From Octopus sinensis (taxonomy: Eukaryota), in contig NC_043006.1 in assembly GCF_006345805.1 (NCBI RefSeq), positions 13,640,001 to 13,704,000 on the forward strand: a DNA stretch of 64,000 nt, read 5' to 3'. The notes beneath the pieces are model-generated. The model was not told where the DNA came from and did not search any database. It saw only the letters and a program-made list of their open reading frames with translations. A program made the position numbers and the translations under genes. The first letter of the stretch is position 1. Every line of letters begins with the position of its first letter. Shown here piece after piece: positions 1 through 50,886 of the stretch.

Positions 1-641
1 CGCCCGGCGTGTTAACGTTTCTGCCGGCTCACCGCATCTCGCCTGCGTCTCTCCAACTGGATGTTATTTCTCTGTAGAGACGGGTTTTTTTTAATACTGG
101 GACATCCTCCATACAGTGGATGCCACCAAGTCGACGGAGCCTGCGTTGCCTGAGCAGAATGAACATGGTTGGGAAACCGGCACATATGTTATGTATCAGG
201 GACGTGCCGCTTAGGCAGGCGACGTAGACAGTGCCTACTTTGAATAAAATAGATCAATAGTAACATTTTCCTGTTATGGCAAAATATGCACCTAATTCAA
301 TAAAATTATGGAGTCTACTCTGATTACTATGCATAAAATGCAAATTATTTTATTCTTTTGTAGATTAGGTAGGCATAACTCTCTCCTGCCTTTCAATCTC
401 AGTATTGAAGCTACGCATAGAACTGCTGTAGTACACATGCTGCGTACATTCCTACAACAACGGTTTCTTTACGCGCTATAAAGGCCCGAAGTAAATCTGC
501 CTACAACTCAGTCGCAGGTGTATGTTTCGCTTAATTTCTTGTGTTTTAATACATAAACGTCACCAACTGCCTACTCCGAGTAATTACTGACGGCATGTGC
601 CTGGCATGTATGTATATATGCATATATATATATATATATGC

Positions 642-687
<46 letters not shown>

Positions 688-690
<3 letters not shown>

Positions 691-1010
691 GAGGCGCAAT
701 GGCCCATGGTTAGGGCAGCGGACTCCCGGTCAGAGGATCGCGGTTTCGATTCCCAGACTGGGCGTTGTGCGTGTTTATTGAGCGAAAACACCTAAGGCTC
801 TACGAGGCTCCGGCAGTGGGGGGTGGCGACCCCTGTTGTACTCTTTCGCCCCAGTTTTCTCTCACTCTTTCTTCCTGTTTTTTTAGTAACGCTGCGATGG
901 ACTGGCGTCCCGTCCAGCTGGGGGGAACACATACGCCATGGAAACCGGGAAACCGGACCATGAGCTTGGCTAGGCTTCAAAAGGGGGCACACAAATAATA
1001 AATAAATAAA
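688..1010 (+). mobile_element. tRNA-derived SINE family A (head type 1 with a V-domain-like tail)
   Basis: tRNA-like head gtggaggcgcaatggcccatggttaggg...ggtttcgattccc (A/B boxes), followed by tgcgatggactggcgtcccgtccag and an (aaat)n tail. Confidence 0.85.
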
Positions 1011-1063
1011 TTTATATATATTTGTTTTGCAAGATTTTTGATCTGAAATCGTGTGTAGAAACA

Positions 1064-1262
1064 TATTATTGTATTTAGGAATGGTCATTTTGCCAGTTTA
1101 GCCAATAAGAACACAGGGGTATGACGAAAGAACTCTGGCCGAAATAAGATTAAGATTAATGTAAAAAAATAAATAACACTGAAGCAAAGTAACACCAAAT
1201 ATATAGTGCGTGTGTTTTTATTGGCTAAACTGGCAAAATGACCATTCCGAAATACAACAATA
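1064..1262. repeat. ~200-bp foldback mini-element with ~50-bp terminal inverted repeats next to TA-rich microsatellite
   Basis: 1064-1115 tattattgtatttaggaatggtcattttgccagtttagccaataagaacac is the near-exact reverse complement of 1211-1262. Confidence 0.8.
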
Positions 1263-1998
1263 TATATATACATACATACGTACTTACATTCATACAAGCA
1301 TACATACATACATACATACATACATACATACATACATACATACATACATACATACATACATACATAAAGACTAAGCTGGCAGAAACATGGGAGTCACTGT
1401 CAATACTGTTCTTGTTAAAGAGTAATAAATATTTACTCTATGGAGTTTAATGTAAAATTGTTTGTATTATATCTTGACATAAAAACAAACACAATACTTA
1501 ATATATCTCACTACCCCGCCTCCCCAACTCCCTGTATCTATTTATCTATATATCAAACTGTTTATAAGCCTGTCTGCCTGTGTTTGTGCCTGTATGTATT
1601 ATGTATGTATGTAGGTTAATATGTACGGGGATTTGTACACAAATGAAAATATGATAAAACTTAATATAAGTAATTGGGTTCAATCTCCTTCGTCGTTAAA
1701 CCATTTTACGCATCCCTTTGAGAATCTTCGTCGAGTAACCTCTAAAATATTTAGGGAGAAAGTGAAAGCTTCTTTGATCTGAAATCCACGTGCTAATTCA
1801 ATTTCTTTTTAGGTTGTTTATAAACGGCGCCACATAGGAATCAAATGAGATCTTTCCCATTTTTGTACTGATTTCTTGAAAAAAAATCTGCATTATTGAT
1901 TTCTTTCTCCTTTCCATGTTTAAACAAATATTAAATTATAACTGTGGAGAATTGTATTTATTTATCATTCCAGCATTATTCATGATGTTTCCTTTATT

Positions 1999-3223
<1,225 letters not shown>

Positions 3224-3307
3224 AATAATGATAATATTAATGATGATAATGATAATAATAATAATGATAATGATAATAACAACAACAGCAACAACAACAA
3301 CAACAAC

Positions 3308-3359
<52 letters not shown>

Positions 3360-3596
3360 GGGTTTCATTTAAAGTAATCCTTTTAGTTTCAGGCCTAATA
3401 CATGCGCAAGAAATGATCACAAAAGGGAATTCTGATGTAAAAATAGTGGCAAATGGCTCACTTTCATGCACTTCAAAATCACTCCACACATACACACACA
3501 CGCACACGAACACACACAGATACACGTGTGTAAATATATTTATTATTTAACATATATGCATAATATGTGTTTGTGTATATACATATATATCTATAT

Positions 3597-4849
<1,253 letters not shown>

Positions 4850-4855
4850 CACATT

Positions 4856-4900
<45 letters not shown>

Positions 4901-4914
4901 ATGTCTATACATAT

Positions 4915-6070
4915 AACTAAAAATTTATCCCGTCCGGAGATTGAACGTGCAAAGAAAGATTTAATAAAATTATTTAAAAATAATAATTTAAATATAGTGT
5001 TTGAAATAAATCATACGATACCTAATTGTTTTAGACATCACTCTTAATCTTAAAACTAATATTCGACATCCATATAGAAAATCAAACCAAAACAAACCTT
5101 TCAGGACCTAAACGTTCTTTCAAATCACCCTAGATCAACCCTCTATCGTATTTTAACTACTATCTCAACTGGAATCTGAAACTGATCGGTGAACGAGGAG
5201 ATATTCAGCACCCATGCACGGTAATATAACCAAGCCCTAAAGTTAAGTATTTTTAAAAAGGAATATTTTACATCCTTGATACAATTCTAAAGACCAAAAT
5301 TTCAAATATCTTGAACTGGCTTACAATCTAGTAATACGAACCTCAGTTTAGATAAACCAATTAAACATATCAAAAAAACACTGAATGAACGAGGCCCGAA
5401 TTAATAACGTGGCATTTAGGAATTAGTAAATATAAGCCCTACATCCCCAACCGATCTAATCAGACCAATTTCTCAAAATCTAGAAAATTATATGGTTCGC
5501 CCCGCCCTCCTCTCTTCGGGTCAAATTTTTACCCAAATTATTTTTTAAGATATTGAAGGAAAACTTTCCTAAAAATCATAAATATCATCCTATTTTTAAT
5601 AAATTCTCTGTAAAATTGTCATACTCAACTACTTGGAATTTAGGTTCGATCATAGATCTAAACTCAGCTTTAAGAAATCTACCCACACAAATCTTTATAA
5701 TGAACTCTATAACTTCAAAACTGACACTGGCTCTAACGTAAATATTACGCCAGGGTAACCCCGGATAGTCGGGGGTAACTTAACCTCTAGTAATCGGAAA
5801 ATTAATACCGATGCGGGAGGGGTGGGGGACATGTAATTGTCGAATTAAGGAGTCGTGTCCTCTAGCCGAAAACTGTTTACGTAATAACGTAGTATATAGG
5901 TGTTCTATGGAAATCCCTGCTACAAATAGGGTAAGAGTTTATATAGGAAGCACTGTAGACTTTAAACTTCGATATAGGTCTCATTTGAATTCTTTTGCTA
6001 ACATAAAAATATCGATCTTCCACAACGCTAGCTTCCTCTATACAAGAACTTTAAATTGCTAGAAGTTGAC
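4915..6070 (+). mobile_element. Degraded Penelope-like element (RT C-terminus and GIY-YIG endonuclease)
   Basis: IERAKKDLIKLFKNNNLNIVFE..LDITLNL...PYRK, then CNCRIKESCPLAENCLRNNVVYRC...VYIGSTVDFKLRYRSHLNSF (GIY-YIG); several frameshifts. Confidence 0.82.
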
Positions 6071-6164
6071 GATTGAAACATAAATATTATGCGCAGGGAA
6101 AGAATCATCAAGTAAGAGGTTTTGGACGCAAGGGTTCTTGAGTAACGCTAGAAAGAGGAGAGAC

Positions 6165-6328
6165 AGGCGGCATTTCATCTACGGATCAGAGGTTTGCGTG
6201 TTGCCGACTTTGCCTTTCATCCTTTCGGGGTCGATAAATTAAGTACCAGTTGCGTACTGGGGTCACTCTAATCGACTGGTCCCCTCCCCCAAAATTTCGA
6301 GCCTTGTGCCTAGAGTAGAAAAGAATAT
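6165..6328 (+). mobile_element. MetaSINE-like family C fragment
   Basis: gactttgcctttcatcctttcggggtcgataaattaagtaccagtt domain with tail cccctccccaaaatttcgagccttgtgcctagagtagaaaagaat. Confidence 0.75.
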
Positions 6329-6639
6329 GTGCATCTTAGATCATGAGCAGGAGTAGTGGGAGAGCATAGTCATGCGCTGAGAGGGATTTTTTGGGGTTTG
6401 GATAAATGTAACAAAAGCAAAGTTTGAAGGAAATATTAGCCATTTTTCATACTTTCTTGGGGTAACGAGCAGGAAATGACAGTTACCACTCCGTCACGAA
6501 ACCTTATTACACAGTGTAATAAAACAACCGAAAAGATTGCTTGAATCAAACACAAGATAATTTTGCGCATCAATTTATTATCAGTCAAACTGATAATATA
6601 ATGTCCTACGTTTATCCGAACAAGGGTATACTTAAATAC

Positions 6640-7100
6640 GTTTAATATATTGGCATTTTACCTGATTTAAAATATTTATTTCTAAGAAATGAATGGATTG
6701 CCTCGCAGACACCCATAAAATTATTAATCATCTTACAAACAATAACTCTGAGCACCTTTTCAAACTCCACCTGTCTAACACCCGTGGACATGTTTACAAA
6801 GTCAGAAAACAGCACAGCTCCCATGACTTTCGGAAACATTTTTTCATGCTAAGAGTTGCTGAAGCAAGGAACTGACTGCCGGCATCAGTTGTTAGTTGTC
6901 GAAGCATTGCATCCTTCAAAACTTCCATGCTTCCTGAGATTCGCCAACACTACACCTGATTTTCTCCCCTCCATACACATGCAAGCATGTATCTGATTCA
7001 TACACTGGTCACTTTGCAGACATTTGTACCTTACTGCATATGCTTTATACGCATTTTTGACAAGTTGTGGTGCACCTGAGCACTGTATACAATAATTTCC

Positions 7101-7135
<35 letters not shown>
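6640..7135 (+). mobile_element. CR1-type LINE 3' end
   Basis: NTRGHVYKVRKQHSSHDFRKHFFMLRVAEA(R/W)N*LPASVV is a typical CR1 ORF2 C-terminus; followed by a 3' UTR and (TTA)n tail. Confidence 0.8.
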
Positions 7136-7137
<2 letters not shown>

Positions 7138-7198
7138 GATTATATTACATCCAGGTCCACTATTCATTAAGAATTCTCTTGGACAGATGGAAGCTTGG

Positions 7199-8022
7199 TT
7201 GCTAATGAGAATGATTAATATGGCTAGAGCTATAGTACAACTGAAGTACACAATATGATAAATGGTTATTATTCATCTGCACACAGCAACAGTAATTATC
7301 AGGCGGTTATATCAGCAAAGAAGGTTAATCACATAGTAATTAACAAATTACTTGCTCACACCATATTGCTGCAACCGCTTAAAACTAAATTATAATGCCT
7401 ACACTAAACTAATGCTTTAGGGAGAGTTTATAAATAAAATAAATGCGTCCTTTTAAAGCCTAGCCAGGCTCATGAGCCCGATTTCCCGGTTTCTTTGGCG
7501 TATGTGTTCCCCATCTGGATGGGACGCCAGTCCATCGCAGCGTTACTCATTTTTGCCAGCTGAGTGGACTGCAGCAACGTGTTTTGTTCAAGAACACAAC
7601 GCCTTGCCCGGTCCAGGAATCGAAACCACAATCTTACGATTATGATGATGACACCCTAACCACTAAGACACGCGCCTCCACAAGGGAGAGTTTAAGGCAT
7701 CAAAATTAAAAGGTAAATGAAGATCGCTATTGATAATTCTCATCAAAGACAGGGTATAGAGGCCTATTGAAAGGTGGAAAGCGTTGGAGAATGAATCTAA
7801 TCTTTGGCGAATTTAATACAGTGAGGACGGTTAAACTACGGACATATATCGTTCATAGTGAAATTTTCGTGGTTGTGTGGTAAGCAACTTGCTTACCAGC
7901 CACATGGTTCCGGGTTCAGTCCAACTGCGTGGCACCTTGGCTAAGTGTCTTCTACTATAGCCTCGGGCCGACTAAAGCCCTGTGAGTGGATTTGGTTGAC
8001 GGAAACTGAAAGAAGCCCGTCG

Positions 8023-8084
<62 letters not shown>

Positions 8085-8151
8085 TGTATTTGAGTTCGTC
8101 CCCACCAACATCACTTGACAATAGATCTTGGTGTATTTACATCCCCGTAAC
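7199..8151. repeat. Left arm of a ~950-bp inverted duplication (partner 10305-11277)
   Basis: Colinear reverse-complement match across unique DNA, a family-A SINE (7432-7681) and a family-B SINE (7870-8151). Confidence 0.93.
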
Positions 8152-8416
8152 ATAGCCTTTTACACCCCTATCACCGTTAGCAGTTGCTGTAAACATTACA
8201 GTAGTCTACCGTAAGATTTATAAATTACCCCAGTTCTCGCTGACACTACCCCACTTTATGTTGTCATTGTCTGCAATGGTCATTGACTGCAAGGGTCAGC
8301 AAAAGGTCATGTTCACATTCAAGTCCACCTGAACTTTTTTTAAATGGATGTTCATGTTATTGGAATGATGGTGTTTTGCGTTAACTAATGGAAAAAAATA
8401 CGGATTGAATACAAAC

Positions 8417-8577
8417 CTTTCCAAGATGCCAAACAGGTGAAAAATATGTCGACAAGTTTGGGAAGATGCAAAAGACCCCAACGCAAAAATCTGCCACTGC
8501 AAGATTTGCCAGGAAGAAATTGGTACGGGTTCTCATTCGTGCATTTTTCACAATGATGTAAAGGACCAAAGAATTAC
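8417..8577 (-). CDS. Coding exon 2 of the same GPCR: end of TM1, ICL1, TM2 and ECL1
   Basis: Acceptor ttttgcag|GT AAT completes the split Gly to give GNSLVLYIIVKNARMRTRTNFFLANLAVADFCVGVFCIFPNLSTYFSPVWHLGK; donor AAG|gtttgt (phase 0). The GN (TM1), TNFFLANLAVAD (TM2) and WxLG (ECL1) class A motifs are present. The segment NLAVADFCVGVFC..NLS.Y...W..G resembles insect trissin receptors as I recall them; not verified by search. Confidence 0.92.
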
Positions 8578-8767
8578 CTGCAAAACGATGAAAAAAATTT
8601 GATTAGTTTATAAATTAATTATATTAGAAATATCAATTAATACATGCACCCCATTGAAATAATTGAAGTGATATTTTTTTAATTATTTGTACATCATATG
8701 TATTTTTAATTGTTTATTTTTTTTTAGAAGATTATAGCATTATCAGCAGAATTTTTAAAAACTCATA

Positions 8768-9147
8768 CACTACCGTCAGAAATTAATTAGCACCCTTGAT
8801 TTGCTCTTCACTCAAGGTATGTGCTGTCACCTAGTGGCCATATCTCGAACTATTGCTTTGTTGCGAGTTCACTGTTGCGCAGAACGATGACGTAACTTTG
8901 TTTGCAGAGCAGTTTGAGAATCTACAGCCTTATGATGTTGACATAGCAGTGCAACAACAACTTGGAGTGCGGATGCAGACAAATCTTCCTTTGTTTAATA
9001 GATATAGGTAGCGCCTCGCAAGGACCGAAATCACACCATACTAAGTTTTCTCATCGCGTAAGACGTTTTGAACAGCTCATAGGTTAATTGATTTAACCTA
9101 TTTAATGTAGAAATTTGAGAAGTGCTAATTAATTTCTGACGCAAGTG
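8768..9147. mobile_element. Tc1/mariner-type MITE (380 bp)
   Basis: TIRs cactaccgtcagaaattaattagcac and gtgctaattaatttctgacgcaagtg, with TA on both flanks. Confidence 0.82.
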
Positions 9148-9328
9148 TATGTACGCTTCATATGTCATGCTAACCCTTGCCATCACTAAAGATCTCCCTT
9201 GAAAGAATATCTTCAGCGTAACAACAACAGCATCTCAAAAACTGATCTTTTTCTTTAGTGCCAGAAAAATACTTTCCTAACAACGTTTTACAAAACACAG
9301 TCAAGACCAGCTAGTTTGTACTGCGCTC

Positions 9329-9359
<31 letters not shown>

Positions 9360-9378
9360 CTCTTTCTCTCTCTCTCTT

Positions 9379-9409
<31 letters not shown>

Positions 9410-9884
9410 TTCTTTCCCCCCCTCTCTCTCTCTCACACACACACACACAAAAGTAAGGTAATTCATATGTGCAACATGAAGTCTCTCACTAACTCCAAAC
9501 TCGTCCCAATAAACTCATCCTTTCTCTGTCTTTGTGCCTTTTCTACAAAATATCAAATTGGTGTGTGTGTGTGTGTGTATGTTTGTGTGTGTGTGTGTAT
9601 GTTTGTGTGTGTGTGTGTGTGTGTGTGTAACTGAATGTTCCGTCGACTTTCTTTTTCTGTTTTTAGTTTAGAGTTAATTTCAACCTGCTACCAACTTAGT
9701 CGCAAGGTTATAAAAAGGTATGAAGTAAACCATCTTGTTTTGTTGAGTATCCTTTAAATGTTGCAGGCTTCTATTGCCCCAGGTATCGCGATCATTTCTA
9801 GAGTATCTGTTAAGGAGCTGCAATTCCTCCCTAAGAACCTAATTTCAGCCTTTCTTAACTTCAAGCTGAATGGTAGGTTGGATA

Positions 9885-10222
9885 GTGGAGGCGCAATGGC
9901 CCAGTGGTTAGGGCAGCGGACTTGCGGTCATAGGATCGCCGTTTCGATTCCCAGACCGGGCGTTGTGAGTGTTTATTGAGCGAAAACACCTAAAGCTCCA
10001 CGAGGATCCGGCAGGGGATGGTGGTGATCCCTGCTGTACTCTTTCACCACAACTTTCTCTCACTCTTACTTCCTGTTTCTGTTGTACCTATATTTCAAAG
10101 GGCCGGCCTTGTCACTCTCTGTGTCACGCTGAATATCCCCGAGAACTACGTTAAGAGTACACGTGTCTGTGGAGTGCTCAGCCACTTACACGTTAATTTC
10201 ACGAGCAGGCTGTTCCGTTGAT
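9885..10222 (+). mobile_element. SINE family A (long-tail subfamily), 3'-truncated and fused to an inverted family-B SINE
   Basis: Same sequence as 16780-17163 up to ttccgttgat, then an abrupt switch to ttagtcgagcaaatcgacc. Confidence 0.85.
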
Positions 10223-10304
10223 TTTTAGTCGAGCAAATCGACCCAAGGACCTATTCTTTGTAAGCCTAGTACTTATTTTTCGGTCTCTTTTGCCGAAACA
10301 CTAA

Positions 10305-10371
10305 GTTACGGGGACGTAAACACACCAAGATCGATTGTCAAGTGAAGTTGGTGGGGACAAACTCAAATACA

Positions 10372-10444
<73 letters not shown>

Positions 10445-11277
10445 GACGGGCTTCTTTCAGTTTCCGTCAACCAAATCCACTCACAGGGCTTTAGTCGGCC
10501 CGAGGCTATAGTAGAAGACACTTACCCAAGGTGCCACGCAGTGGGACTGAACCCGGAGCCATGTGGTTGTTAAGCAAGTCACTTACCACACAACCACGAA
10601 AATTTCACCATGAACGATATATGTCCGTAGTTTAACCTTCCTCACTGTATTAAATTCGCCAAAGATTAGATTCATTCTCCAACGCTTTCCACCTCTCAAT
10701 AGGCCTCAGTACCCTGTCTTTGATGAGAATTATCAATAGCGCTTTTCATTTACCTTTTAATTTTGATGCCTTAAACTCTCCCTTGTGGAGGCGCGTGGCT
10801 TAGTGGTTAGGGTGTCAGCATCATAATCGTAAGATTGTGGTTTCGATTCCTGGACCGGGCGAGGCATTGTGTTCTTGAGCAAAACACTTCATTTCACGTT
10901 GCTCCAGTCCACTCAGCTGGCAAAAATGAGTAACGCTGCGATGGACTGGCGTCCCATCCAGCTGGGGAACACATACGCCATAGAAACCGGGAAATCAGGC
11001 CCATGAGCCTGGCTAGGCTTTAAAAGGGCGCATTTATTTTATTTATAAACTCTCCCTAAAGCATTAGTTTAGTGTAGGCATTATAATTTAGTTTTAAGCG
11101 GTTGCAGCAATATGGTGTGAGCAAGTAATTTGTTAATTACTATGTGATTAACCTTCTTTGCTGATATAACCGCCTGATAATTACTGTTGCTGTGTGCAGG
11201 TGAATAATAACCATTTATCATATTGTGTACTTCAGTTGTACTATAGCTCTAGCCATATTAATCATTCTCATTAGCAA
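10305..11277. repeat. Right arm of the ~950-bp inverted duplication (partner 7199-8151)
   Basis: 11186-11275 gttgctgtgtgcaggtgaataataacc...tctcattagc is the reverse complement of 7201-7290; the match runs inward to ggggacgtaaa/tttacatcccc. Confidence 0.93.
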
Positions 11278-12315
11278 AAGATTATAATATCCTTTTCCCA
11301 ATTATTTTGAGTTTATGAATAAGATTAGTGATATAAATCATGACTTTTGTCTATCTTAGCTATACTTGAGCGCTAGTCGTCTTAATGTTTCTCATTAGCA
11401 AAAGATGAGATTTTTTTATCTGAAATTATCAAAAGTACTAATATAAATTTATACGTTGCAATTCCTACTATGGGTAAACTAAAAACTCAAACATTTTTTC
11501 TATGCTACTGATGTATAGAAAAAAAGAGGAAAGGAGTCTCCTGATACAAGGACTCGTTGTTTGTTGACCACTCCTTAAAGACATACTCTGTTTCCACCCC
11601 CAGTCAATAGCACAAAGCAGTCATAAATGGTTGTTATTGTCAGATTATTATAATCTCAACATTAGCTGCATCTTCGCATACAGAAATATCATCTCTTTTC
11701 ACGATTTGCACTCATTTACAAGCGCAAACACACACAAACACACAATTCTCATATATAACAATATTGGTTTCAACGTACCATTCAAGATAAAAATTATTGT
11801 AAAACAAATTCAAAATCGAAGGATTAATTTCTTTCCACTAAATATGTAACCTTGTACCTCGGATTGAAACGATTATCTTCTATTGTCCTCGACAATTTAC
11901 TGTTAATGTATATAATTAATATGCATTGTTCCACAATTTTGCCTTCCTTTTTCTCCTTGTCATTCTTTATTTACTTAAATGTGTTTTAATATAGAACCAA
12001 ATCAGAATTGATTTAGTTTCCATTGTTTGGTTACGACTGCAGTTGACTTATACCAGAAGTTTTGATAGAGTAAGACCTACAATACATTAGTCTAATGTAT
12101 CTAAGCAACCTACACTAAAACTTACTTTTGTGGTAGATACAATGGATGTAAATGCTTGTTAAAATACCTAAGATTTATCCATTATAAAATAATTACAGCT
12201 CGGTTAGATCTCAAATTAAGAAACAGGTAGTCTTCTAAAAGATTTTAAAAAATATATATATATGGATATATATGTGTGTGTGAATATGCATATATATACA
12301 TATATATGGATATGC

Positions 12316-12361
<46 letters not shown>

Positions 12362-12466
12362 ATAGACAGACGCACACACACACATGTATGTGTAAATACA
12401 TATATTTACATATAGACATACACACACATATATATAACTATAAATACATACATATTTATATCCATA

Positions 12467-12572
<106 letters not shown>

Positions 12573-12681
12573 TATAGATATATTTATCTATAAATATATA
12601 TGTGTGTGTCTGTGCGTATGCATATATACAACATTATATGTATAAATGTCAGAAGCTTGCTATTTTCTCTCTCTTTACCTT

Positions 12682-12751
<70 letters not shown>

Positions 12752-13344
12752 TATATACATATATATACATATATACACACACACACATATGTATATATAC
12801 TTTTGGTATATTATGATGATATCTAAATACGCAATCAATCACAGTATTATTCTAGAAAAGATTCAATTAGTACAGTTTATATTCGAGCATACAAATATAG
12901 ATATCATGGATTTTCATGTACGAAACAATATCCTCTCAAAAACCGGTTGGTGAGCTATCCTTCTTTTTCTTTGCTTTTTTTTATCTCTTTTTAATGTTAT
13001 TTTTGTTTTCCTGTGAGGAAGTATCTATTGTTGAAGTTATTTGCATTGTTAACAAAACATCAAATTATCTGCCATCTGACAGTAGTAATTAATATTTCTA
13101 AAGAGAGATTTTACTGCAGGCACATATCGATTTTTGGTACCAAGTAAGATTTCGATTTGCAAAAGATAAGTTTATTGAAGTCTATATTGTTGTTGCTGTT
13201 GTTTTTGTTTAGCCCTGAGAGATCTGTCCTGAACCAGCCGACCTATGATGAAAAGCCTTGCTACAATGATAATCAAGCCCTATATTTTTGCGATATATTT
13301 CTTCTGCACTACATGATTCCAACCGTTATTATACCTCCCTCTCT

Positions 13345-13540
13345 TTACAGTCCTCTCCCTCTCCCTCTCTATACACTCCTCTCCCTCTCTATACACTCCT
13401 CTCCCTCTCTATACACTCCTCTCCCTCTCTATCTCCTCTCTACATATCTCTTTCTTATACCACCCTCAATCCCTCTGTCCCTTTATCCCCTTTTCTAGCT
13501 CTCACTCTCCCCTCTCTCTCATTCTCCCTCATTAGACAAG
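13345..13540. repeat. Polypyrimidine minisatellite (20-bp unit atacactcctctccctctct, three or more copies)
   Basis: Direct inspection. Confidence 0.85.
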
Positions 13541-15784
13541 CAGGTGGAATTTGAGGGAAGCATTTCTATCGTTTTTATCAAGTTGTAAGACTACCCAGAA
13601 GTCTCCGTGTTGGTGTGACTTTAGCCCTTAAAAGGGCGGAAAAGGGTTGAAGGAATATGTTCCAAAAACACAAGAAAGATATCACTTTTTCTTAAGAGTA
13701 ATTTTCATCTAGGTACAAGAGTGGCTGTGCGGTAAGTAGCTTGCTTACCAACCACATGTTTCCGGGGTCATTCCCACTGCGTGGCACCTTGGGCAAGTGT
13801 CTTCTACTATAGCCTCGGGCTGACCAAAACCTTGTGAGTTGATTTGGTAGACGGAAACTGAAAGAAGCCTGTCGTATATATGTACATATATATATATATG
13901 TGTGTGTGTATATGTTTGTCTATCTGTGTTTGTCCCCCCCCCAACATTGCTTGACAACCGATGCTGGTGTGTTTACGTCTCCATAATTTAGTGATTCGGC
14001 AAAAGAGACCGATGGAATAAGTACAAGGCTTCCAAAGAATAAGTCTTGGAGCCGATTTGCTCGACTAAAGGCGGTGCTCCAGCATGGCCGCATTCAAATG
14101 ACTGAAACAAATAAAAGAGACTAAAAGAAAAGAGAGTATACTTATTTTCACTTTAGATAAGTACAAAATCTATAATAATTGTTAGTCTGTCGCTTATTAA
14201 AATTTAGTGTCATTAATGAAAAGCCCTGCAGAATATTCACTTTACTTTCTTTTGATGATGGCGATATCTACGTGAAAATTTTGAAACGTCATTTGATGAT
14301 GTCTGCCATTAAAGCATATTAAGAGTTAAAACATATTTTTTTCAATCATGACAGAGTAAAGATACTTGTGACCCCTGAGGCAATATACAATAATATCTGA
14401 GGAAGCATTAAACATTGTCACAGATTTAAATATAGTTTCATTCTCAGCGGTGTCTATTGAATAGTTCAACGTAGCATATTGCTCCTTCATTTTTCCATAA
14501 AATATTTTTTTATCATGATTCATTGCTTGCCGCAGAACAGCGAGAATCCCAACTTAGATCAAATAAAATGATAACATATTTATTCATTCTTAATATGTTC
14601 GTTATTTTCCAGAACGTATTAAATATGAATAGATACTTTTAACTATGAATAAGCATTGTTTAGATATTCGCTGTGCTGCTTGTACCCAATAGATTATTAT
14701 TTGTTCGGGCGACAACAGTATGTATAAAAAATATAATTATCTTCTGTTGATTCCTATAAACGAACGCTTGTGCTATTGTCAGATACATCAGACCAGCGGG
14801 ATAACGTTGACTGATTAGACACACAAGATCGAAACACCTTGACGTCTGAAACCTTTACACCGGTGAATCACGTGTTATGATCACCTGTCGGATAAGGAGA
14901 GAAAATATTCGCCGAAGATGAAAAACAACAGCGATCAAATATTCACATTCAAATTTGCTAGCACGTATTTAAAATGTATAGATACGTTCTTTTTTTTACT
15001 ATCTTAAAGTCATAAGGTAAGGTTGCACCTACAACCCGTCGCAGAGCCTCCAAGATCTGTGGGGTGGAGAGAAGATATCCTTAACTTGAAGGACTGGCAA
15101 GAGAGTAGACTCCGCTAAAAAACATACAAGGTACCAGGAAGTGGCGTTAAAGCGGTGACGTCTTAGTTGTAACTTAAGATTCTAACTTAATTAGACTAGG
15201 AAATTTAAGAAAATATTATAAAAAGAATGACCACTTTTTTTTTCCACTCTCCACACATGCACACATATTTACAATTAAAACAATTATGTACCAGGAACTT
15301 TATGCTAAAAATAACAAAGTTCTAAGATCGATTTGAAAAACTAATGAACTCCGCCTATCAAAGAATAAAATAGCTGAATGATTACACAGATAATAAACCC
15401 TTTTATCTTTTACTGGTTTCAATCATTGAACAGCGGCCATGCAAGGATAACGCCTTGAAGGTTTTAGACGAACAGATAGACCCCCCCCCCCTAGTGCTAA
15501 TTTTAAAAGTTTGATGCTTACTCTATCTGTTGAAACGCTAAGTTACAGGGACGTAAACAAACCAACACCAGTTGTCAAGCAGTGGTAGAAGATTAACACT
15601 AACTCGAAGACAGATACATGTGGCGGGAATCTTCACAGTGTCTGTCTCACCAAATTCACTCATAAATTCACTTACAGTAAAAGACATTTGTCCAATGTGC
15701 CGCACAGTGAGACTGAACCCGAAACCAAATGGTTGGAAAGTGAGCACAACAAGCAATCGAATTATAAAAATGGTAAACACTTAC

Positions 15785-15950
15785 CAAATACACAGCACAT
15801 GAATATCACAGAGTACAAAAAGCAAAATGTTACTTTGATATGTATTTTGTTGAACGGGTTTATAAACGTGCCCAAACTGTAACCAACTGTACCATTAAGA
15901 GTATTATTCAATTCGTCAATAACCACTGTTGAATTAAGCTGGTTTTCCAT
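15785..15950 (-). CDS. Coding exon 1 of a rhodopsin-family (class A) neuropeptide GPCR, trissin-receptor-like: extracellular N-terminus and most of TM1
   Basis: Reads MENQLNSTVVIDELNNTLNGTVGYSLGTFINPFNKIHIKVTFCFLYSVIFMCCVF+G (166 nt = 55 codons + 1). It has three N-glycosylation sequons (NST, NNT, NGT), then a hydrophobic TM1, and ends at a consensus donor TTTG|GTAAGT (phase 1) that matches the next exon. Confidence 0.9.
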
Positions 15951-16565: not shown

Positions 16566-16779
16566 TTACATATATATCTTTTGCAAAGTATTTTTCCGCC
16601 TGTATACAAATCTATAGAGAAACGAATAAAACAAAAGCATATTATACTAGTATATTATAAACCACAACACAAAAATATAACCGTATTATAATCTTCATTC
16701 TTATCATTACTTTAACCTGTTTCAGTTGGAAATAGTGGCCACGCTGAGCCACAGTCACTGCTGCTATATAGATGTTTAT

Positions 16780-17163
16780 GTGGAGGCGCAATGGCCCAGT
16801 GGTTAGGGCAGCGGACTCGCGGTCATAGGATCGCGGTTTTGATTCCCAGACCGGGCGTTGTGAGTGTTTATTGAGCGAAAACACATAAAGCTCCACGAGG
16901 CTCCGGCAGGGGATGGTGGTGATCCCTGCTGTACTCTTTCACCACAACTTTCTCTCACTCTTACTTCCTGTTTCTGTTGTACCTGTATTTCAAAGGGCCG
17001 GCCTTGTCACTCTCTGTGTCACGCTGAATATCCCCGAGAACTACGTTAAGGGTACACGTGTCTGTGGAGTGCTCAGCCACTTACACGTTAATTACACGAG
17101 CAGGCTGTTCCGTTGATTCGGATCAACAGGAACCCTCGTCGTCGTAACCGACGGAGTGCTTCC
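16780..17163 (+). mobile_element. Young full-length SINE family A (long-tail subfamily)
   Basis: tRNA-like head; 13-bp TSD tatagatgtttat (16767-16779 and 17164-17176). Confidence 0.92.
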
Positions 17164-18411: not shown

Positions 18412-19463
18412 TATATACCGTTGATATGCAGTATATATCAATATTGTATATCAGTAAATATATATCGACGTATCTACCCCGATATCTATACAGCTATATT
18501 TAGAGATGCAGCGATGTACATATATGGATACCGATATATCTAAATATCGATATAGCTGTCAATGCAGGCATACATACATACATACATACATACATACATA
18601 CATACATACATACATGCATACATACATACATACATACATACATGCATACATGCATACATACATACATACATACATACATACATACATACATAACAATATG
18701 TTTACTCCTATTCCATTGTTAAGACAGCTTCGTGTATTTGCAGGAAATTCCATTGATAAATTTAGATGATCGATCGACCACACGCAGGCTCCCTCGTTGG
18801 TTCTTACGATAACGTTGAATGGTTCATCGATGTAAACAACCGAGCACTCTATAATTAACGTGTGTTCGCTTATAATCAGTACTAAACATAATTCCATCCT
18901 CGGTGGATATGATTCAGAGAAATAGAAGCTTCCAGAAGGTTCAGCATGAATCACATTATGTGCATTTCATAAACAGGGTGACTTCAATAAATGGTGTCAT
19001 AATGTTCCTTTTGAACATTTGTAAGGTTAACACTGCACAAAATAATATGGGAAAAGAGGAAATTAGAGAATCAGGGATCTGGAAAGGAAGAAGTGGACGT
19101 AGTAATTGGCGAGGAACCGAGGGTGTGTGGAAAGAACAAGGGTGAGGGGAGAAAGAGAATCGAATGAGGCAGAAATACTTGACTAAATGCGGCAGGAGCT
19201 TAGCCAGCGCTGAGAAGCAGAGATTTTTATAACAGTTGCAGAAAATGTAGAGATCATTTGTCTGAATAATATGCATGGAGTGCTTGGTCTGACAATGTAT
19301 ATTGATTTGGCGGTTGGCTCAATAAAATATATGCAATTTACCTGAAATGGTGTTATTTAATATCTTTTAACTTTATATGTGACCACAGAGAAAGGTTTTT
19401 AAGAAGTGTGTGCCGCTTACCATTCAGAAACATGATTAGACATAGTACGCATAGTTTTCAGAA

Positions 19464-19851
19464 GTGGAGGCGCAATGGCCCATTGGTTAGGGCAGCGGAC
19501 TCGCAGTTATAGGATCGCAGTTTCGATTCCCAGATCGGGCGTTGTGAGTGTTTATTGAGCGAAAACACCTAAAGCTCCACGAGGCTCCGGCAGGGGATGG
19601 TGGTGATCCCTGCTGTACTCTTTCACCACAACTTTCTCTCACTCTTACTTCCTGTTTCTGTTGTACCTGTACTTCAAAGAGCCGGCCTTGTCACTCTCTG
19701 TGTCTCGCTGAATATTCCCGAGAACTACGTTAAGGGTACACGTGTCTGTGGAGTGCTCAGCCACTTACACGTTAATTTCACGAGCAGGCTGTTCCGTTGA
19801 TTCGGATCAACCGGAACCCTCGTCGTCGTAACCGACGGAGTGCTTCCAACC
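19464..19851 (+). mobile_element. Young full-length SINE family A
   Basis: 11-bp TSD agttttcagaa (19453-19463 and 19852-19862). Confidence 0.92.
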
Positions 19852-28635: not shown

Positions 28636-28877
28636 ATAATAAATGCGCCCTTTTAAAGCCTAGCCAGGCACATGGTCCTGGTTTCCAGGTTTCCATGGCG
28701 TATGTGTTCCCAAGCTGGGTGGGACACCAGTCCATCACACCGTTACTCATTTATTGCCAGCTGAGTGGAATGAAGTGTTTTGCTCAAGAACACAACGCGT
28801 CGCTCGGCCCAGGAACCGAAACCACAATCTTACGATCATGATGGTGACACCCTAACCACTAAGCCTTGCGCCTCCAC
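28636..28877 (-). mobile_element. SINE family A (head type 2 with V-like tail)
   Basis: Same structure as 10785-11045 and 7432-7681. Confidence 0.85.
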
Positions 28878-31170: not shown

Positions 31171-32899
31171 GTGTATGCGCACACACTGACCCACAGACAT
31201 GCGCGTGATTAGACTCGGAAACTTTGTGAAGAAACATTTGACCCAATTTACTGACCAGTTAAATACTAAGGATGATGTTTTCGACTCTTCTCTCTATACC
31301 AAAACAAAAAATGTAACCGCATGTCACTATATAAATATGATTATTAGTGATATTCTGAATATAAATATGATCATTTTCTTTTTTCTTTTTCTTTTTACTT
31401 GTTTCAGTCATTTTGACTGCAGCCATGCTGGAGCACCGCCTTTAGTCGAGCAACTCGACCCCGGAACTTATTCTTTGTAAGCCCAGTACTTATTTTATCG
31501 TTCTCTTTTGCCGAACCGCTAAGTGACGGGGACGTAAACACACCAGCATCGGTTGTCAAGCAATGCTAGGGGGACAAACACAGACACACAAACATATACA
31601 CATATATATATATATATATATATACATATATACGACAGGCTTCTTTCAGTTTCCGTCTACCAAATCCACTCACAAGGCTTTGCTCGGCCCGAGGCTATAG
31701 CAGAAGACACTTGCCCAAGGTGCCACGCAGTGGGACTGAACCCGGAACCATGTGTTGGTTAGCAAGCTACTTGCCACACAGCCACTCCTGCGCCTATTAG
31801 TGATATTCTGAATATAAATATGATTATTGGTGATATTCTGTCTTTGAAACCCAAATGAATGCTGCGTAAAATATGCACGTAAAAAATCTGACAGGAAAAA
31901 CCGAAACTGAAAAATCCAGGAAAATATGCAATATCAGAACCGACTGGTCATTTATGATCAAACTGACACCGTTTCTTACATCCCAAACAACTCATAAAAT
32001 TCCAAAATGAAAACATGTTTTATAAATAATCCTATTCTAAACATTTGTATTCTCTAGCACACAATCGGACACTGTTGTGTGATAACTAATTTCATAAGGG
32101 ACTATGACTACAAACTGGTTTCGTTTGTCACTTAAAGGTAGCATTGTCTCCATATTCTACTAATGCCTATGGTAGTTATTTATTCAAATCAATACCTTTT
32201 CATGTTCTGCTTTCTTGTCAAACTATCGTTTTCATGTCTAGTTATCATGTCTAACACTCCCTTTCATATTTTGTAATATATCTGTGACCTGTCTGCACTA
32301 TATCTGCTGTATTGTTTCTTAAGGGATCCAGATACCATCGCAATCTAGTAAGTAATCAAAGTGTCTCAATTTTTTCTATTCTGTGTGTTGTTTACTAACG
32401 TTATTGAACATGGTTCAACTTTGTAACGAAGAAACACATGAACACTTTTTGTATCATACTACTCGACAGAGAAGACATTTTGAAAATGGCTTTAATGGAG
32501 GTGAAATTATATTTAACGAAACACTAAGTTTTTCCTATTCATGTATAATACAAAAGGTTTTCATAGAAATATTTCATTCTTAGGTATTATTACTTCAATT
32601 CATTTTCTTGTTCTTTTCTCTAGTTTTTGTGGCTATGTTCTCTGGTTATTCTTTTGTATAAGTATTATTATATACCTTCATCCGTCTATAATGGCTTACA
32701 TGAAATTTCCACTGAATGAATAGATAGATAAATAAATGAATAAATATATCATATAGAAACGTTTTGAGAAGCTACAATAAACTTGCTGAAATTACAGAAA
32801 ACTTATAAATCTGTATTGAAATTCATTGATGAAAAAAGCCCGAGGGTATATATTCTTTATACAAACATTCTACATGACAGATTCACCCATTAGTTAACT

Positions 32900-40204: not shown

Positions 40205-40601
40205 CGTGCAGACCTAACCAGTTAGAAGTGAATAGTAAGTTGCACCTTCCGTCTGTCTCTAAATTTCAAACTATGCAAATCCGCAGCGGGTCGGAGAAGT
40301 CATATGAGAGATCATAGACAGAATATGAGAAATGCCGTTCACAAGGAGGCACAAGGAGACGGCAATCATCTGTGAAGATGAAGCAATCCCCATAACCTTT
40401 TCCTTGTTTCCGTCAGTTGACTGTGGCCATGATGGAGCACCGCCTTTAATCGAGCAAATCGACCCCAGGACTTATTCTTTGTAAGCCCAATACTTATTCT
40501 ATCGGTCTCTTTTGCCGAACCGCTAAATTGCAGCGATGTAAACACACCAGCGTCGGTTGCCAAGCGATGTTGGGGGGAAAAAAACACAGACACACAAACA
40601 T

Positions 40602-40636
<35 letters not shown>

Positions 40637-41300
40637 CGACAGGCTTCTTTCAGTTTCCGTCTACCAAATCCACTCACAAGGCTTTGGCCGACTCGATGCT
40701 ATAGTAGAAGACACTTGGCGAAGGTGCCACGCAGTGGGACTGAACCCGGAAACTATGTGGTTGGTAAACAAGCTACTTACCACACGGCCACTCCTACGCC
40801 TATGTATGTTTTCTTAGTCTTATTTTCCGAATTTATCATCAACGGAGAAAATACTAGCTTTTAACCTAGAAACATCTTTCATGCATTCATTGGATTTTAG
40901 ACAACGTCAACAGGATAGTCTTCTATGTATGTATTTATGTACAAATGCATACGCCTACCAATTATTTATTTATTTATTTTTTATTTTTTATCTTGTATCT
41001 GCTATTTTTTCATCGTGCACGCTTCTCTCCGTTCTTTCCCTATTTTTCAATCTTATTTTACATTTTATTTTATTTCTGTATACACGCAAACATACATACA
41101 CACACGTACATATATATATATACACACGCGTACAGATACACGCACGTGCACACACATGAATGCACATATACCTCATACTTATATATGCACTGTGCACACG
41201 ACCAGTTTAAATAATAATAATAGTAATTATATCTATATATCTTATATATCTATATATCTATATATATATCTATCTATATATATATATCTATATATATATA

Positions 41301-41359: not shown

Positions 41360-41905
41360 ACTTAGATATGTTTCGACTAAAGATTGGTCCAGGCCATGTC
41401 TAACTTAATAGCACCACCTGATAGGATTATTCGAATCCTGTTTAAGTCAAGTTTTGTTTATGGTCCATTCAAGTAGTGAGTTCTTGTTGGGTGAGTTGTA
41501 TCCAATTATGGGTGGCTTATCTGGTATTCTCTGAAGGAATCGATCCAGACTCCGTTTAAAGTTGATGGGATCCTTTTCCTCTTTGATCTCTTTCGGGACA
41601 ATGTTAAATAGGGCAGGGCCTGTTGAGGAAAAGAAATTATGTTGCAGTGTACATGTATGTTGTGATCTTGAATTGGACAGGGGACGTATGGCCCGTGGTC
41701 CCAGTCTTGGATGAACCTTGAAGCTAATGTTCAGGTCGTTTGGGCAAAGTTGGCGGTATATTCTCCACATCGTACAAATGACGTACCTCTCACGGCGACG
41801 CTGGAGAGAGTAAAGTTTCAAGGCTTTAAGGCGATCCCAATAATCGAGAGCAGCCATGCCTTCAATTCGTTTAGTGAGTGCCCTCTGGGGTGACTCAATA
41901 CTCGA
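41360..41905 (-). mobile_element. CR1-type LINE 3' end
   Basis: LDYWDRLKALKLYSLQRRRERY...GPALFNIVPKEIK...FKRSLDRFLQRIPDKP is a CR1 ORF2 C-terminus. Confidence 0.85.
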
Positions 41906-50045: not shown

Positions 50046-50503
50046 AAGGGAGAGAGAGAGAGAGAGCATGTATGTATGTGTGAATTTCCATATAAACTAA
50101 ACAAGTAGTTCTTTTGATCTCTTTTCTTACATTATAATTATTGTTTTATCGAATTTTATTTTATGATAAATATTCTCATTTGGAAACTTGAATACATTTT
50201 ATCATACTGCACAAGCGCCAACAAATTTGATAAGAGTTAAATTGTAATTATTATATGTATGCTATACTTTTCTGATATCACCCAGAGCAGCTTTTGCTGC
50301 TCCATCGTTACCTGTCGTACGACACTTCCAAATAATCTGTCATATGATAGGTAACAATCTAGCACAATAATATTTGGGTGACATCATCTGCGCCAATATC
50401 AATTCAATGATATAACTTGAGTTGCTTCTTGTTTTTAGGGAAAGTTTTCTCTTCTAATCGTTTGGATAATATCAGTTGAAGTTTTCAATTCTATTATATA
50501 TAA

Positions 50504-50886
50504 GTGGAGGCGCAATGGCCCAGTGGTTAGGGCAGCGGACTCGCGGTCATAGGATCGCGGTTTCGATTCCCAGACCGGACGTTGTGAGTGTTTATTGAGC
50601 GAAAACACCTAAAGCTCCACGAGGCTCCGGCAGGGATGGTGGTGATCCCTGCTGTACTCTTTCACCACAACTTTCTCTCACTCTTACTTCCTGTTTCTGT
50701 TGTACCTGTATTTCAAAGGGCCGGCCTTGTCACTCTCTGTGTCACGCTGAATATCCCCGAGAACTACACTAAGGGTACACGTGTCTGTGGAGTGCTCAGC
50801 CACTTACACGTTAATTTCACGAGCAGGCTGTTCCGTTGATTCGGAACAACCGGAACCCTAGTCGTCGTAACCGACGGAGTGCTTCC
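50504..50886 (+). mobile_element. Young full-length SINE family A
   Basis: Near-identical to 16780-17163. Confidence 0.9.

What the first reader, a model, noticed from the sequence alone, without database searches (positions are those of the whole stretch)
7199..11277. GPCR exon 2 lies in the loop of a ~950-bp inverted duplication
Seen: 7199-8151 and 10305-11277 are reverse complements over unique DNA and two embedded SINEs, so this is a local duplication and not two independent SINE insertions. The 2.15-kb loop contains the 161-nt exon 2, whose donor is about 265 nt from the inner edge. The family-B SINE is cut off at the left inner edge but continues past the right one, so the right arm is probably the donor copy. 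Established: long intronic inverted repeats flanking an exon promote back-splicing (circRNA) or exon skipping and are ADAR substrates, and coleoid cephalopods edit RNA extensively. Inference: the pre-mRNA could form a ~0.95-kb duplex that controls exon 2 inclusion. Skipping 161 nt would frameshift the receptor.
Basis: partly seen in the sequence, partly recalled or inferred. Interest (0 to 1): 0.72.

Follow-up and report, generated by a model that had tools for sequence, protein, structure and literature searches.

The report
Inverted intron duplication bracketing a receptor exon
About 960 bases of one intron of a neuropeptide-type receptor gene were copied backwards into the next intron, so one coding exon sits in the loop of a potential very long RNA hairpin; the structure is real, but nothing yet shows that it regulates the gene.

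Summary
Window 7199-8155 and 10301-11277 are reverse complements in one colinear alignment. Substitution divergence is 3.6% outside the microsatellite. Each arm holds about 425 bp of DNA found nowhere else in the window, plus two short interspersed repeats. This pair is more than twice as long as any other repeat pair in the 64 kb.

The 2145-bp loop carries a genuine 161-nt minus-strand exon (8577..8417) with AG/GT splice sites. It encodes the end of TM1 through TM2 of a rhodopsin-family, neuropeptide-type GPCR. Exon 1 lies at 15950..15785. The right arm is therefore in intron 1 and the left arm in intron 2, 261 nt past the donor. The right arm is the parental copy. There is no target-site duplication, so this is a local inverted duplication and not a transposon.

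As RNA, the arms pair over about 926 bp (about -1733 kcal/mol), far stronger than any competing pairing. Control of exon 2 by circRNA formation or skipping is mechanistically reasonable but untested here. Published octopus data report low circRNA levels overall. The likeliest reading is a neutral structural accident that creates an ADAR-editable intronic duplex. The outer 249 bp of the arms are almost identical, which suggests arm-to-arm gene conversion. The source organism was not verified.

The parts
7199..8155 (.). Left arm, the derived inverted copy, in intron 2 of the minus-strand GPCR gene. It is transcribed after exon 2.
   Evidence: reverse complement of 10301-11277. It ends inside the family-B repeat. 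No target-site duplication at its flanks.
10301..11277 (.). Right arm, the parental copy, in intron 1. It is transcribed before exon 2.
   Evidence: The family-B repeat continues 77 nt past the inner edge, to 10224. The outer flank is shared with an older diverged partial copy at 11328-11429.
8156..10300 (.). Loop of 2145 bp between the arms.
   Evidence: It contains exon 2, a MITE-like element, (CT)n and (GT)n microsatellites, a young family-C repeat and the 77-nt tail of the parental family-B repeat.
8417..8577 (-). Coding exon 2 (161 nt) of a rhodopsin-family, neuropeptide-type GPCR. It covers the end of TM1, ICL1, TM2 and the start of ECL1.
   Evidence: 7tm_1, 51 bits; 70-72% identity to mollusc GPCR fragments; closest solved structures NPFF1, NPY2, CCKA. 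AG acceptor at 8579-8578 after a pyrimidine tract. Donor AAG|GTTTGT at 8416.
15785..15950 (-). Exon 1 coding part: ATG, an N-terminus with three N-x-S/T sequons, and TM1. It ends with G|GTAAGT.
   Evidence: When it is joined to exon 2 the junction reads ...FMCCVF-G-NSLVL, parallel to the Lottia fragment P0002 ...FICCCVGNSLVL.
7438..7681 (-). Family-A short interspersed repeat in the left arm. It has a tRNA-like head with A/B-box-like motifs.
   Evidence: Other copies lie at 28638-28877 (86%) and 885-989 (90%).
10785..11038 (+). Family-A repeat in the right arm. It carries 10 extra bases (GTGAAATGAA) relative to the left copy.
7868..8155 (+). Family-B repeat in the left arm, truncated at the duplication breakpoint. 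It contains the (TA)n(TG)n microsatellite.
   Evidence: it aligns to positions 78-375 of the right-arm copy.
10224..10598 (-). Full-length family-B repeat (375 bp). Its last 77 nt lie outside the arm.
   Evidence: At least six other copies in the window at 71-82% identity.
7199..7447 (.). Outer tract of near-identity between the arms (1 mismatch in 249). Its partner is 11029-11277.
   Evidence: 0.4% against 4.8% divergence, change-point at 7447, permutation p about 0.005.
11328..11429 (+). Older, diverged direct partial copy of the right arm's outer end plus its flank.
   Evidence: it aligns to 11200-11305 across the arm boundary, which polarises the right arm as ancestral.

Best explanation
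This is a real, moderately old, local inverted duplication that was not made by a transposon. About 960 bp of intron 1 of a minus-strand neuropeptide-type GPCR gene (the right arm) was copied in reverse orientation into intron 2, 261 nt downstream of exon 2's 5' splice site (the left arm). The mechanism was probably a replication template switch or templated break repair.

Every pre-mRNA transcribed through the locus can therefore fold into a duplex of about 926 bp that loops out exon 2. The most likely molecular fate of that duplex is promiscuous ADAR editing and degradation with the excised introns. At most a minor fraction of transcripts would be diverted to an exon-2 circle or to an exon-1/exon-3 skipped, frameshifted product.

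The duplication is most likely a selectively neutral or mildly deleterious accident, not an evolved switch. At the DNA level the arms have probably exchanged sequence by gene conversion in their outer 249 bp.

Shown: the structure, the polarity of the copies, the exon identity and the pairing potential. Inferred: the mechanism of origin, editing, low impact on splicing and gene conversion.
For: Structure and uniqueness. Unique DNA inside the arms, and arms far more alike than any other copies of the embedded repeats. Parental right arm. No TSD, and a conserved host exon in the loop. Both arms lie in the introns flanking exon 2.

RNA duplex: 926 pairs, -1733 kcal/mol, longest perfect helix 171 bp. 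It is retained (924 pairs) in the MFE of the 4.3-kb pre-mRNA segment. Competing pairings reach only -532 and -551 kcal/mol.

Neutral-looking decay: 18 transitions to 14 transversions, with no strand bias, at a level like the young family-C repeats.

[quoted passage not shown] More hairpin stability does not mean more circular RNA (PMC4201285).

Divergence step along the arms.
Against: No RNA data were available, so a substantial effect on exon 2 inclusion cannot be excluded. The geometry resembles designs that do circularise: about 800 nt of perfect repeats in an artificial vector, and at least 400 nt at mouse Sry (PMC4201285). The arm sits close to the donor, the exon 2 donor GTTTGT is weak-looking, and intron 2 is longer than 8.4 kb, which leaves time for pairing.

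The near-identity of the outer 249 bp could instead reflect selection for pairing.

The organism, and hence its ADAR activity, was not verified. The part of intron 2 beyond the window may hold competing repeats.
Confidence: 0.55

Rival explanations
1. The 0.95-kb duplex is a functional regulator. By looping out exon 2 it diverts a substantial, possibly ADAR- or temperature-tunable share of pre-mRNA to a 161-nt circRNA or to a frameshifted skipped mRNA, and so sets receptor dosage.
For: Flanking reverse-complementary matches promote both back-splicing and skipping (PMC8330042; PMC4201285). The duplex dominates all local alternatives. The arm lies 261 nt from a non-consensus donor. Intron 2 is longer than 8.4 kb. 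The outer arm tract is kept nearly identical.
Against: There are no expression data. CircRNAs are low overall in O. vulgaris and are antagonised by ADAR. Very stable or long hairpins can inhibit circularisation. The arms otherwise decay at about 4.8% with no sign of maintained complementarity. Intron 1 can be spliced before the left arm is even transcribed (inference from transcription order).
Confidence: 0.18
2. The main consequence is at the DNA level. The arms recombine with each other by gene conversion, and occasionally by crossover that inverts the 2.1-kb loop. This would make exon 2 an invertible segment, and the inverted allele would be a receptor null.
For: The arms are 957 and 977 bp long at 96% identity. 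Divergence steps abruptly from 0.4% (outer 249 bp) to 4.8%, as expected from a recent conversion tract. Inverted repeats flanking gene segments are a known substrate for inversion by non-allelic homologous recombination (established knowledge, for example human F8 int22h).
Against: In this assembly the loop is in the functional, original orientation. Both polarity markers (the inner family-B tail and the outer flank copy) agree. The arms are short for frequent crossover. There are no population data.
Confidence: 0.1
3. The hairpin is a source of small RNAs, as in hpRNA or endo-siRNA loci. Dicer would process the intronic duplex into siRNAs, for instance against the embedded repeat families.
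For: The duplex is long and near-perfect, with 11 uninterrupted helices of at least 30 bp. More than half of each arm is interspersed repeat. Long inverted duplications give endo-siRNAs in Drosophila (established knowledge).
Against: No small-RNA data. The duplex is intronic and nuclear. ADAR editing would compete. No evidence was retrieved here for such loci in molluscs.
Confidence: 0.05
4. Assembly artefact: a chimeric or fold-back read, or a misplaced haplotig, created a second arm that does not exist.
For: Inverted duplications are a known artefact class. Neither arm could be found in an independent assembly.
Against: The arms differ by 32 substitutions, a 10-bp indel and microsatellite lengths. 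They are separated by 2.1 kb of unique sequence that holds a correctly oriented exon. The left copy has its own distinct flanks. Fold-back artefacts give near-identical arms with almost no spacer (inference).
Confidence: 0.04
5. A mobile element: either a fold-back or long-TIR DNA transposon spanning 7199-11277, or two independent insertions of one composite element.
For: The arms are terminal inverted sequences of one 4.1-kb block and are rich in interspersed repeats.
Against: No target-site duplication. The interior carries a conserved host GPCR exon with splice sites. The arms' unique parts have no other copy in 64 kb. One arm is truncated relative to the other inside a repeat. The right arm's flank shares older homology with neighbouring DNA.
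Confidence: 0.03

Closest known systems
Mouse Sry locus, where an exon between the arms of a genomic inverted duplication gives circSry
   Same: The complementary flanks come from a genomic inverted duplication, not from independent transposon insertions. An exon with consensus splice sites lies in the unique region between the arms. A stem-loop model brings donor and acceptor together, and about 400 nt or more of complementarity sufficed (PMC4201285, citing Capel 1993 and Dubin 1995).
   Different: The Sry arms are longer than 15 kb and flank a single-exon gene. Here the arms are about 0.96 kb and flank an internal coding exon of a multi-exon GPCR gene. No circular product is known here.
Inverted Alu or short-repeat pairs flanking circularised exons (ZKSCAN1, HIPK3, EPHB4), and the artificial ciRS-7 vector with about 800-nt perfect repeats
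   Same: Reverse-complementary sequences in the two flanking introns pair across the exon. Pairing across introns competes with pairing within introns (PMC4201285).
   Different: Those natural cases use independent SINE insertions of about 300 nt, with 30-40 nt being sufficient. Here one block about three times longer, including about 425 bp of unique DNA, was duplicated locally. That paper also shows that stability does not predict efficiency.
C. elegans zip-2 reverse complementary matches
   Same: Intronic complementary matches flanking an exon promote both back-splicing and skipping of that exon (PMC8330042).
   Different: The zip-2 match is 13 nt, conserved across nematodes and experimentally validated. 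Here the match is 0.96 kb, its conservation is unknown and it is untested.
ADAR hyper-editing substrates formed by nearby inverted repeats in introns and 3'UTRs
   Same: A long intramolecular dsRNA within one transcription unit. In octopus most editing is reported in introns and 3'UTRs where hairpins are frequent (PMC9699675; PMC9989829).
   Different: It is far longer and more perfect than a typical repeat pair (the next-best pairs in this window are 377-420 bp at 76-80%). Editing was not observed here.
Inversion-prone inverted repeats flanking gene segments (for example human F8 int22h; established knowledge, not retrieved here)
   Same: Inverted paralogous arms flank part of a gene. The arms can homogenise by gene conversion, and a crossover would invert the intervening exon.
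   Different: Those arms are about 10 kb or more with documented inversions. Here the arms are about 1 kb, and only indirect evidence of exchange exists (the divergence step).

Membership tests
Exon flanked by intronic reverse-complementary sequences (circRNA/skipping architecture) | Complementary sequences lie in the intron upstream and the intron downstream of the same exon | tested here: met
   Right arm in intron 1 (15784..8578), left arm in intron 2 (from 8416 downwards). Exon 1 and exon 2 were located on the minus strand.
Exon flanked by intronic reverse-complementary sequences (circRNA/skipping architecture) | The bracketed exon has functional-looking 3' and 5' splice sites | tested here: met
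   Pyrimidine tract plus AG at 8579-8578. Donor AAG|GTTTGT at 8416, which matches the consensus at +1, +2 and +5 only. The exon boundaries coincide with where homologous mollusc ORF fragments diverge.
Exon flanked by intronic reverse-complementary sequences (circRNA/skipping architecture) | Cross-intron pairing outcompetes pairing within each intron | tested here: met
   -1733 kcal/mol against -532 kcal/mol (within intron 1) and -551 kcal/mol (another cross-intron pair). The MFE keeps 924 arm pairs. Only the part of intron 2 inside the window could be examined.
Exon flanked by intronic reverse-complementary sequences (circRNA/skipping architecture) | A back-splice junction, an RNase R-resistant product or a skipped isoform is observed | not testable with these tools
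   No RNA-seq access. The protein and contig look-ups found no record of this locus.
ADAR hyper-editing substrate | A long, largely perfect intramolecular duplex in one transcript | tested here: met
   926 pairs, 11 uninterrupted helices of at least 30 bp, the longest 171 bp. Both arms are intronic in the same gene.
ADAR hyper-editing substrate | Clustered A-to-G mismatches in RNA, in an organism with active ADARs | not testable with these tools
   No RNA data. The organism was not identified. It is only mollusc-like by the best GPCR hits.
Local (non-transposon) inverted segmental duplication | A colinear copy that includes unique DNA, located near its source | tested here: met
   A single HSP spans two unique segments and two repeats, 2.1 kb from the source.
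Local (non-transposon) inverted segmental duplication | Breakpoints lack transposon hallmarks (TSD, TIR, poly(A)) | tested here: met
   Only 3-nt chance matches between the flanks. The inner breakpoint falls inside a repeat.
Local (non-transposon) inverted segmental duplication | Microhomology at the junctions, as template switching would leave | tested here: inconclusive
   The pre-insertion target sequence is unknown. Inspection of the junctions shows nothing decisive.
Fold-back or long-TIR DNA transposon | Terminal inverted repeats bounded by a target-site duplication, with multiple genomic copies | tested here: not met
   No TSD. The unique arm segments are single-pair in the window. The interior holds a host exon.
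Rhodopsin-family (class A) GPCR exon | Significant match to 7tm_1 with the TM1 GN and TM2 NLAxAD motifs | tested here: met
   51 bits against a cut-off of 30.5, profile positions 1-63. Sequence ...G-NSLVL...FFLANLAVADF. The closest solved chains are NPFF1, NPY2 and CCKA receptors, E about 1e-13 to 1e-10.
hpRNA / endo-siRNA locus | 20-23-nt small RNAs from both arms | not testable with these tools
   No small-RNA data.

The most novel reading that the evidence does not exclude
The inverted duplication is a selected RNA switch kept complementary by gene conversion. The duplex loops out exon 2 and, depending on how strongly ADAR edits and destabilises it (for instance with temperature or neuronal state), gates production of functional neuropeptide-receptor mRNA against circular or frameshifted products. 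That would link cephalopod hyper-editing to receptor dosage through intron structure and not through recoding.
Probability: 0.05. Interest if true: 0.75.

Novelty: new member of a known kind. Interest (0 to 1): 0.3.

Why it matters
If the duplex affects splicing, it would be a clean natural example, outside vertebrates and model invertebrates, of a genomic inverted duplication governing inclusion of an essential receptor exon. It would also be a natural example of interplay between ADAR editing and back-splicing in an animal group known for heavy editing. It is unusually testable, because there is one exon, one dominant hairpin, and arm-specific variants that allow unambiguous read assignment.

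If, as seems more likely, it is neutral, it is mainly a well-resolved example of how small inverted duplications arise and decay, and possibly exchange sequence, inside introns. It is also a caution that such structures need RNA evidence before a function is claimed.

Tried and rejected
1. Independent copies or orthologues of the locus. A protein search with the exon 2 peptide returned only mollusc fragments at 72% identity or less. Exact look-ups of the exon 1, exon 2 and arm ORFs found nothing. Neither cross-assembly confirmation nor cross-species dating was therefore possible.

2. Identifying the organism. A retroelement ORF (2380-3009) hit unnamed contigs at 79-87% identity, from GCA_024449705.1 and SRR7158634. 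These accessions appear in no paper held in the library. The taxon remains unverified.

3. Finding exon 3 in the window. A Pfam scan of whole minus-strand frames with stops replaced by X returned nothing, not even exon 2. That test is insensitive, so I rejected it. A motif and hydropathy scan for a TM3/DRY exon in 1-8416 found none.

4. RNA families and tRNA genes in 6500-12000. Only sub-threshold hits driven by microsatellites turned up, and no tRNA.

5. Transposon reading. I searched for a TSD at the left copy's flanks and found none.

6. Editing-like bias in the DNA differences between the arms. There is none: 10 pyrimidine against 8 purine transitions on the plus strand outside the microsatellite, counted by hand from the mismatch list.
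Full report
**Observation**

The inverted repeat is real and sits at the stated place. The repeat finder reports three adjoining inverted segments: 7199-7581/10895-11277 at 98%, 7579-8087/10379-10887 at 94% and 8023-8160/10296-10433 at 91%. blastn joins them into one colinear match, 7199-8155 with 11277-10301, over 977 columns at about 94% identity with E = 0.

A gapped alignment and a column census give 32 substitutions in 891 non-microsatellite columns (3.6%). Of these, 18 are transitions and 14 transversions, and 5 are CpG transitions. There is also a 10-bp indel in the family-A repeat and a length difference in a (TA)n(TG)n microsatellite.

Within the 64-kb window, segments 7199-7437 and 7682-7867 match nothing except their partner arm. 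The two embedded repeat families have other dispersed copies at only 71-90% identity: family A at 885-989 and 28638-28877, and family B at 3598-4015, 13721-14069, 31441-31785, 40445-40791, 45980-46322 and 60790-61142. The arms are therefore one duplicated block. No other direct or inverted repeat pair in the window is longer than 421 bp.

**The gene**

It is preceded by a pyrimidine tract and an AG (8579-8578) and followed by GTTTGT (8416-8411).

Its third frame reads NSLVLYIIVKNARMRTRTNFFLANLAVADFCVGVFCIFPNLSTYFSPVWHLGK. This matches Pfam 7tm_1 positions 1-63 at 51 bits, against a gathering score of 30.5. It is 70-72% identical to single-exon ORF fragments from Lottia, Elysia and unnamed contigs. 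The closest solved receptors, searched with exons 1 and 2 joined, are neuropeptide FF, neuropeptide Y2 and cholecystokinin-A receptors.

A scan for an upstream exon ending in phase 1 with a hydrophobic tail found one clean candidate. It runs from an ATG at 15950 to 15785, followed by GTAAGT, and encodes MENQLNSTVVIDELNNTLNGT...IKVTFCFLYSVIFMCCVF. Joined to exon 2 it gives ...CCVF-G-NSLVL, parallel to the Lottia fragment ...CCCVGNSLVL. Calling the 161-nt exon "exon 2" is therefore justified for the coding region.

Intron 1 is 7207 nt (15784..8578) and holds the right arm. The left arm lies in intron 2. No TM3/DRY-type exon was found in 1-8416 on the minus strand, so intron 2 exceeds 8.4 kb. A cruder Pfam scan of whole frames failed its positive control and is disregarded. 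Because 161 mod 3 = 2, skipping the exon shifts the frame and removes TM2.

**Which arm is the source, and how it arose**

Two independent markers point to the right arm as parental. First, the family-B repeat is full-length (375 bp, 10224-10598) at the right arm. It runs 77 nt beyond the homology boundary, whereas the left copy stops at 8155. Second, the right arm's outer end together with about 28 nt of its flank has an older, diverged direct partial copy at 11328-11429. The left arm's homology to that copy stops exactly at the arm boundary.

The flanks of the left copy share no target-site duplication. The interior carries a conserved host exon. These facts exclude a fold-back or long-TIR transposon and two independent insertions of a composite element.

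I infer, but have not shown, a replication template switch or templated repair of a break in intron 2 using sequence 2.1 kb away. The junctions give no decisive microhomology, because the pre-insertion target is unknown. Both polarity markers agree and exon 2 has the same orientation as exon 1, so the loop is in its original orientation in this assembly.

An assembly artefact is unlikely. The arms differ at 32 positions plus indels, and they are separated by 2.1 kb of unique sequence. I could not confirm the structure in any independent assembly.

**A divergence step along the arms**

Divergence is not uniform. The outer 249 bp (7199-7447, paired with 11029-11277) have one mismatch (0.4%), against 4.8% for the rest. 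The maximum-likelihood change-point is at 7447, with a permutation p of about 0.005.

Composition does not explain this step. The middle unique segment has a similar G+C content (35% against 32%) but 3.8% divergence. The simplest explanation is a later arm-to-arm gene-conversion tract. Selection on that segment, or a polishing artefact, cannot be excluded.

**RNA consequences**

The gene is on the minus strand, so transcription produces the right arm first, then exon 2 after 1723 nt, then the left arm 261 nt after the donor.

ViennaRNA duplexfold pairs the arms over 926 base pairs (531 A-U, 385 G-C, 10 G-U) at -1733 kcal/mol. There are 11 uninterrupted helices of at least 30 bp, and the longest is 171 bp. 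The minimum-free-energy fold of the 4.3-kb pre-mRNA segment keeps 924 of these pairs. The only other inverted pairs of at least 80 bp in the transcribed part of the window are diverged family-B or family-A copies, at -532, -551 and -181 kcal/mol. If the transcript exists, this duplex should dominate its local structure.

**What is known, and how it bears on the interpretation**

Flanking complementary sequences do promote back-splicing. Deleting them abolishes both the circle and the skipped isoform in C. elegans zip-2 (PMC8330042). Mouse Sry is circularised through a genomic inverted duplication, and an artificial vector with about 800 nt of perfect repeats circularises efficiently (PMC4201285).

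Three points weigh against a strong effect here:

1. The same paper shows that thermodynamic stability is a poor predictor, and that stronger or longer repeats can inhibit circularisation.
2. In Octopus vulgaris most A-to-I editing is in introns and 3'UTRs. [quoted passage not shown]
3. Intron 1 can be removed before the left arm is transcribed, which would leave only an inert intronic hairpin partner (inference).

The pattern of differences between the arms looks like neutral decay, with no excess of any transition class.

**Verdict**

The structural observation is confirmed in every detail that could be checked. The functional inference is plausible but untested, and I rate it a minority possibility. 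My best estimate is a neutral local inverted duplication that makes a long, probably hyper-edited intronic dsRNA around exon 2, with possible arm-to-arm gene conversion at the DNA level.

The kind of structure is well known, so this is a new member of a known kind, of modest interest. It is nonetheless an unusually clean and testable case.

The assumption that the source is an octopod is consistent with the mollusc-like GPCR hits and with the repeat- and microsatellite-rich, 30-43% G+C sequence. The tools did not verify it.

Noticed in passing
window 7199-7447 and 11029-11277: The outer 249 bp of the arms are 99.6% identical, while the remaining 642 compared columns differ by 4.8%. The change-point is at 7447 with a permutation p of about 0.005. 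This suggests a later gene-conversion tract between the arms, or constraint on that segment.
   Followed up: partly
window 8764-9151: A 388-bp element in the loop, 187 nt upstream (in transcript terms) of the exon 2 acceptor. It is bounded by 30-nt terminal inverted repeats at 93% (CATACACTACCGTCAGAAATTAATTAGCAC). It looks like a MITE and has no other copy in the window.
   Followed up: no
window 9884-10223; also 16777-17163, 19462-19848, 50501-50887, 51411-51785: A young repeat family (C): five copies at 95-98% identity, all in the plus orientation. The loop copy directly abuts the tail of the old family-B repeat at 10223/10224, and its alignment to the 387-bp copies stops about 45 nt short of their 3' ends. 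Its roughly 105-nt head is about 72% similar to the head of family A.
   Followed up: partly
window 11328-11429: A diverged direct partial repeat (about 70%) of 11200-11305, that is, of the right arm's outer end plus its flank. It indicates an older small tandem duplication at the parental site.
   Followed up: yes
window 15785-15950 (minus) and 15673-15735: Exon 1 of the GPCR, with an ATG, three N-glycosylation sequons, TM1 and a consensus GTAAGT donor. A diverged family-B-like fragment lies within about 50-110 nt of the donor in intron 1, in the same orientation as the right-arm copy.
   Followed up: partly
window 2380-3009 (plus), 5784-6059 (plus), 41450-41950 (minus): Open reading frames that look like retroelement remnants. 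Only the first was searched: it matched proteins that sources name reverse transcriptase or reverse-transcriptase zinc-binding, at 79-87% identity to unnamed contigs from GCA_024449705.1 and SRR7158634. The other two readings rest on inspection of the translations. The first two lie inside intron 2 of the GPCR gene.
   Followed up: partly
window 8410-8416 (minus-strand donor of exon 2): The exon 2 donor is AAG|GTTTGT, which matches the 5' splice-site consensus only at +1, +2 and +5. The exon 1 donor is the consensus G|GTAAGT. A weak donor next to the hairpin arm could make exon 2 more sensitive to structure. This was not quantified.
   Followed up: no
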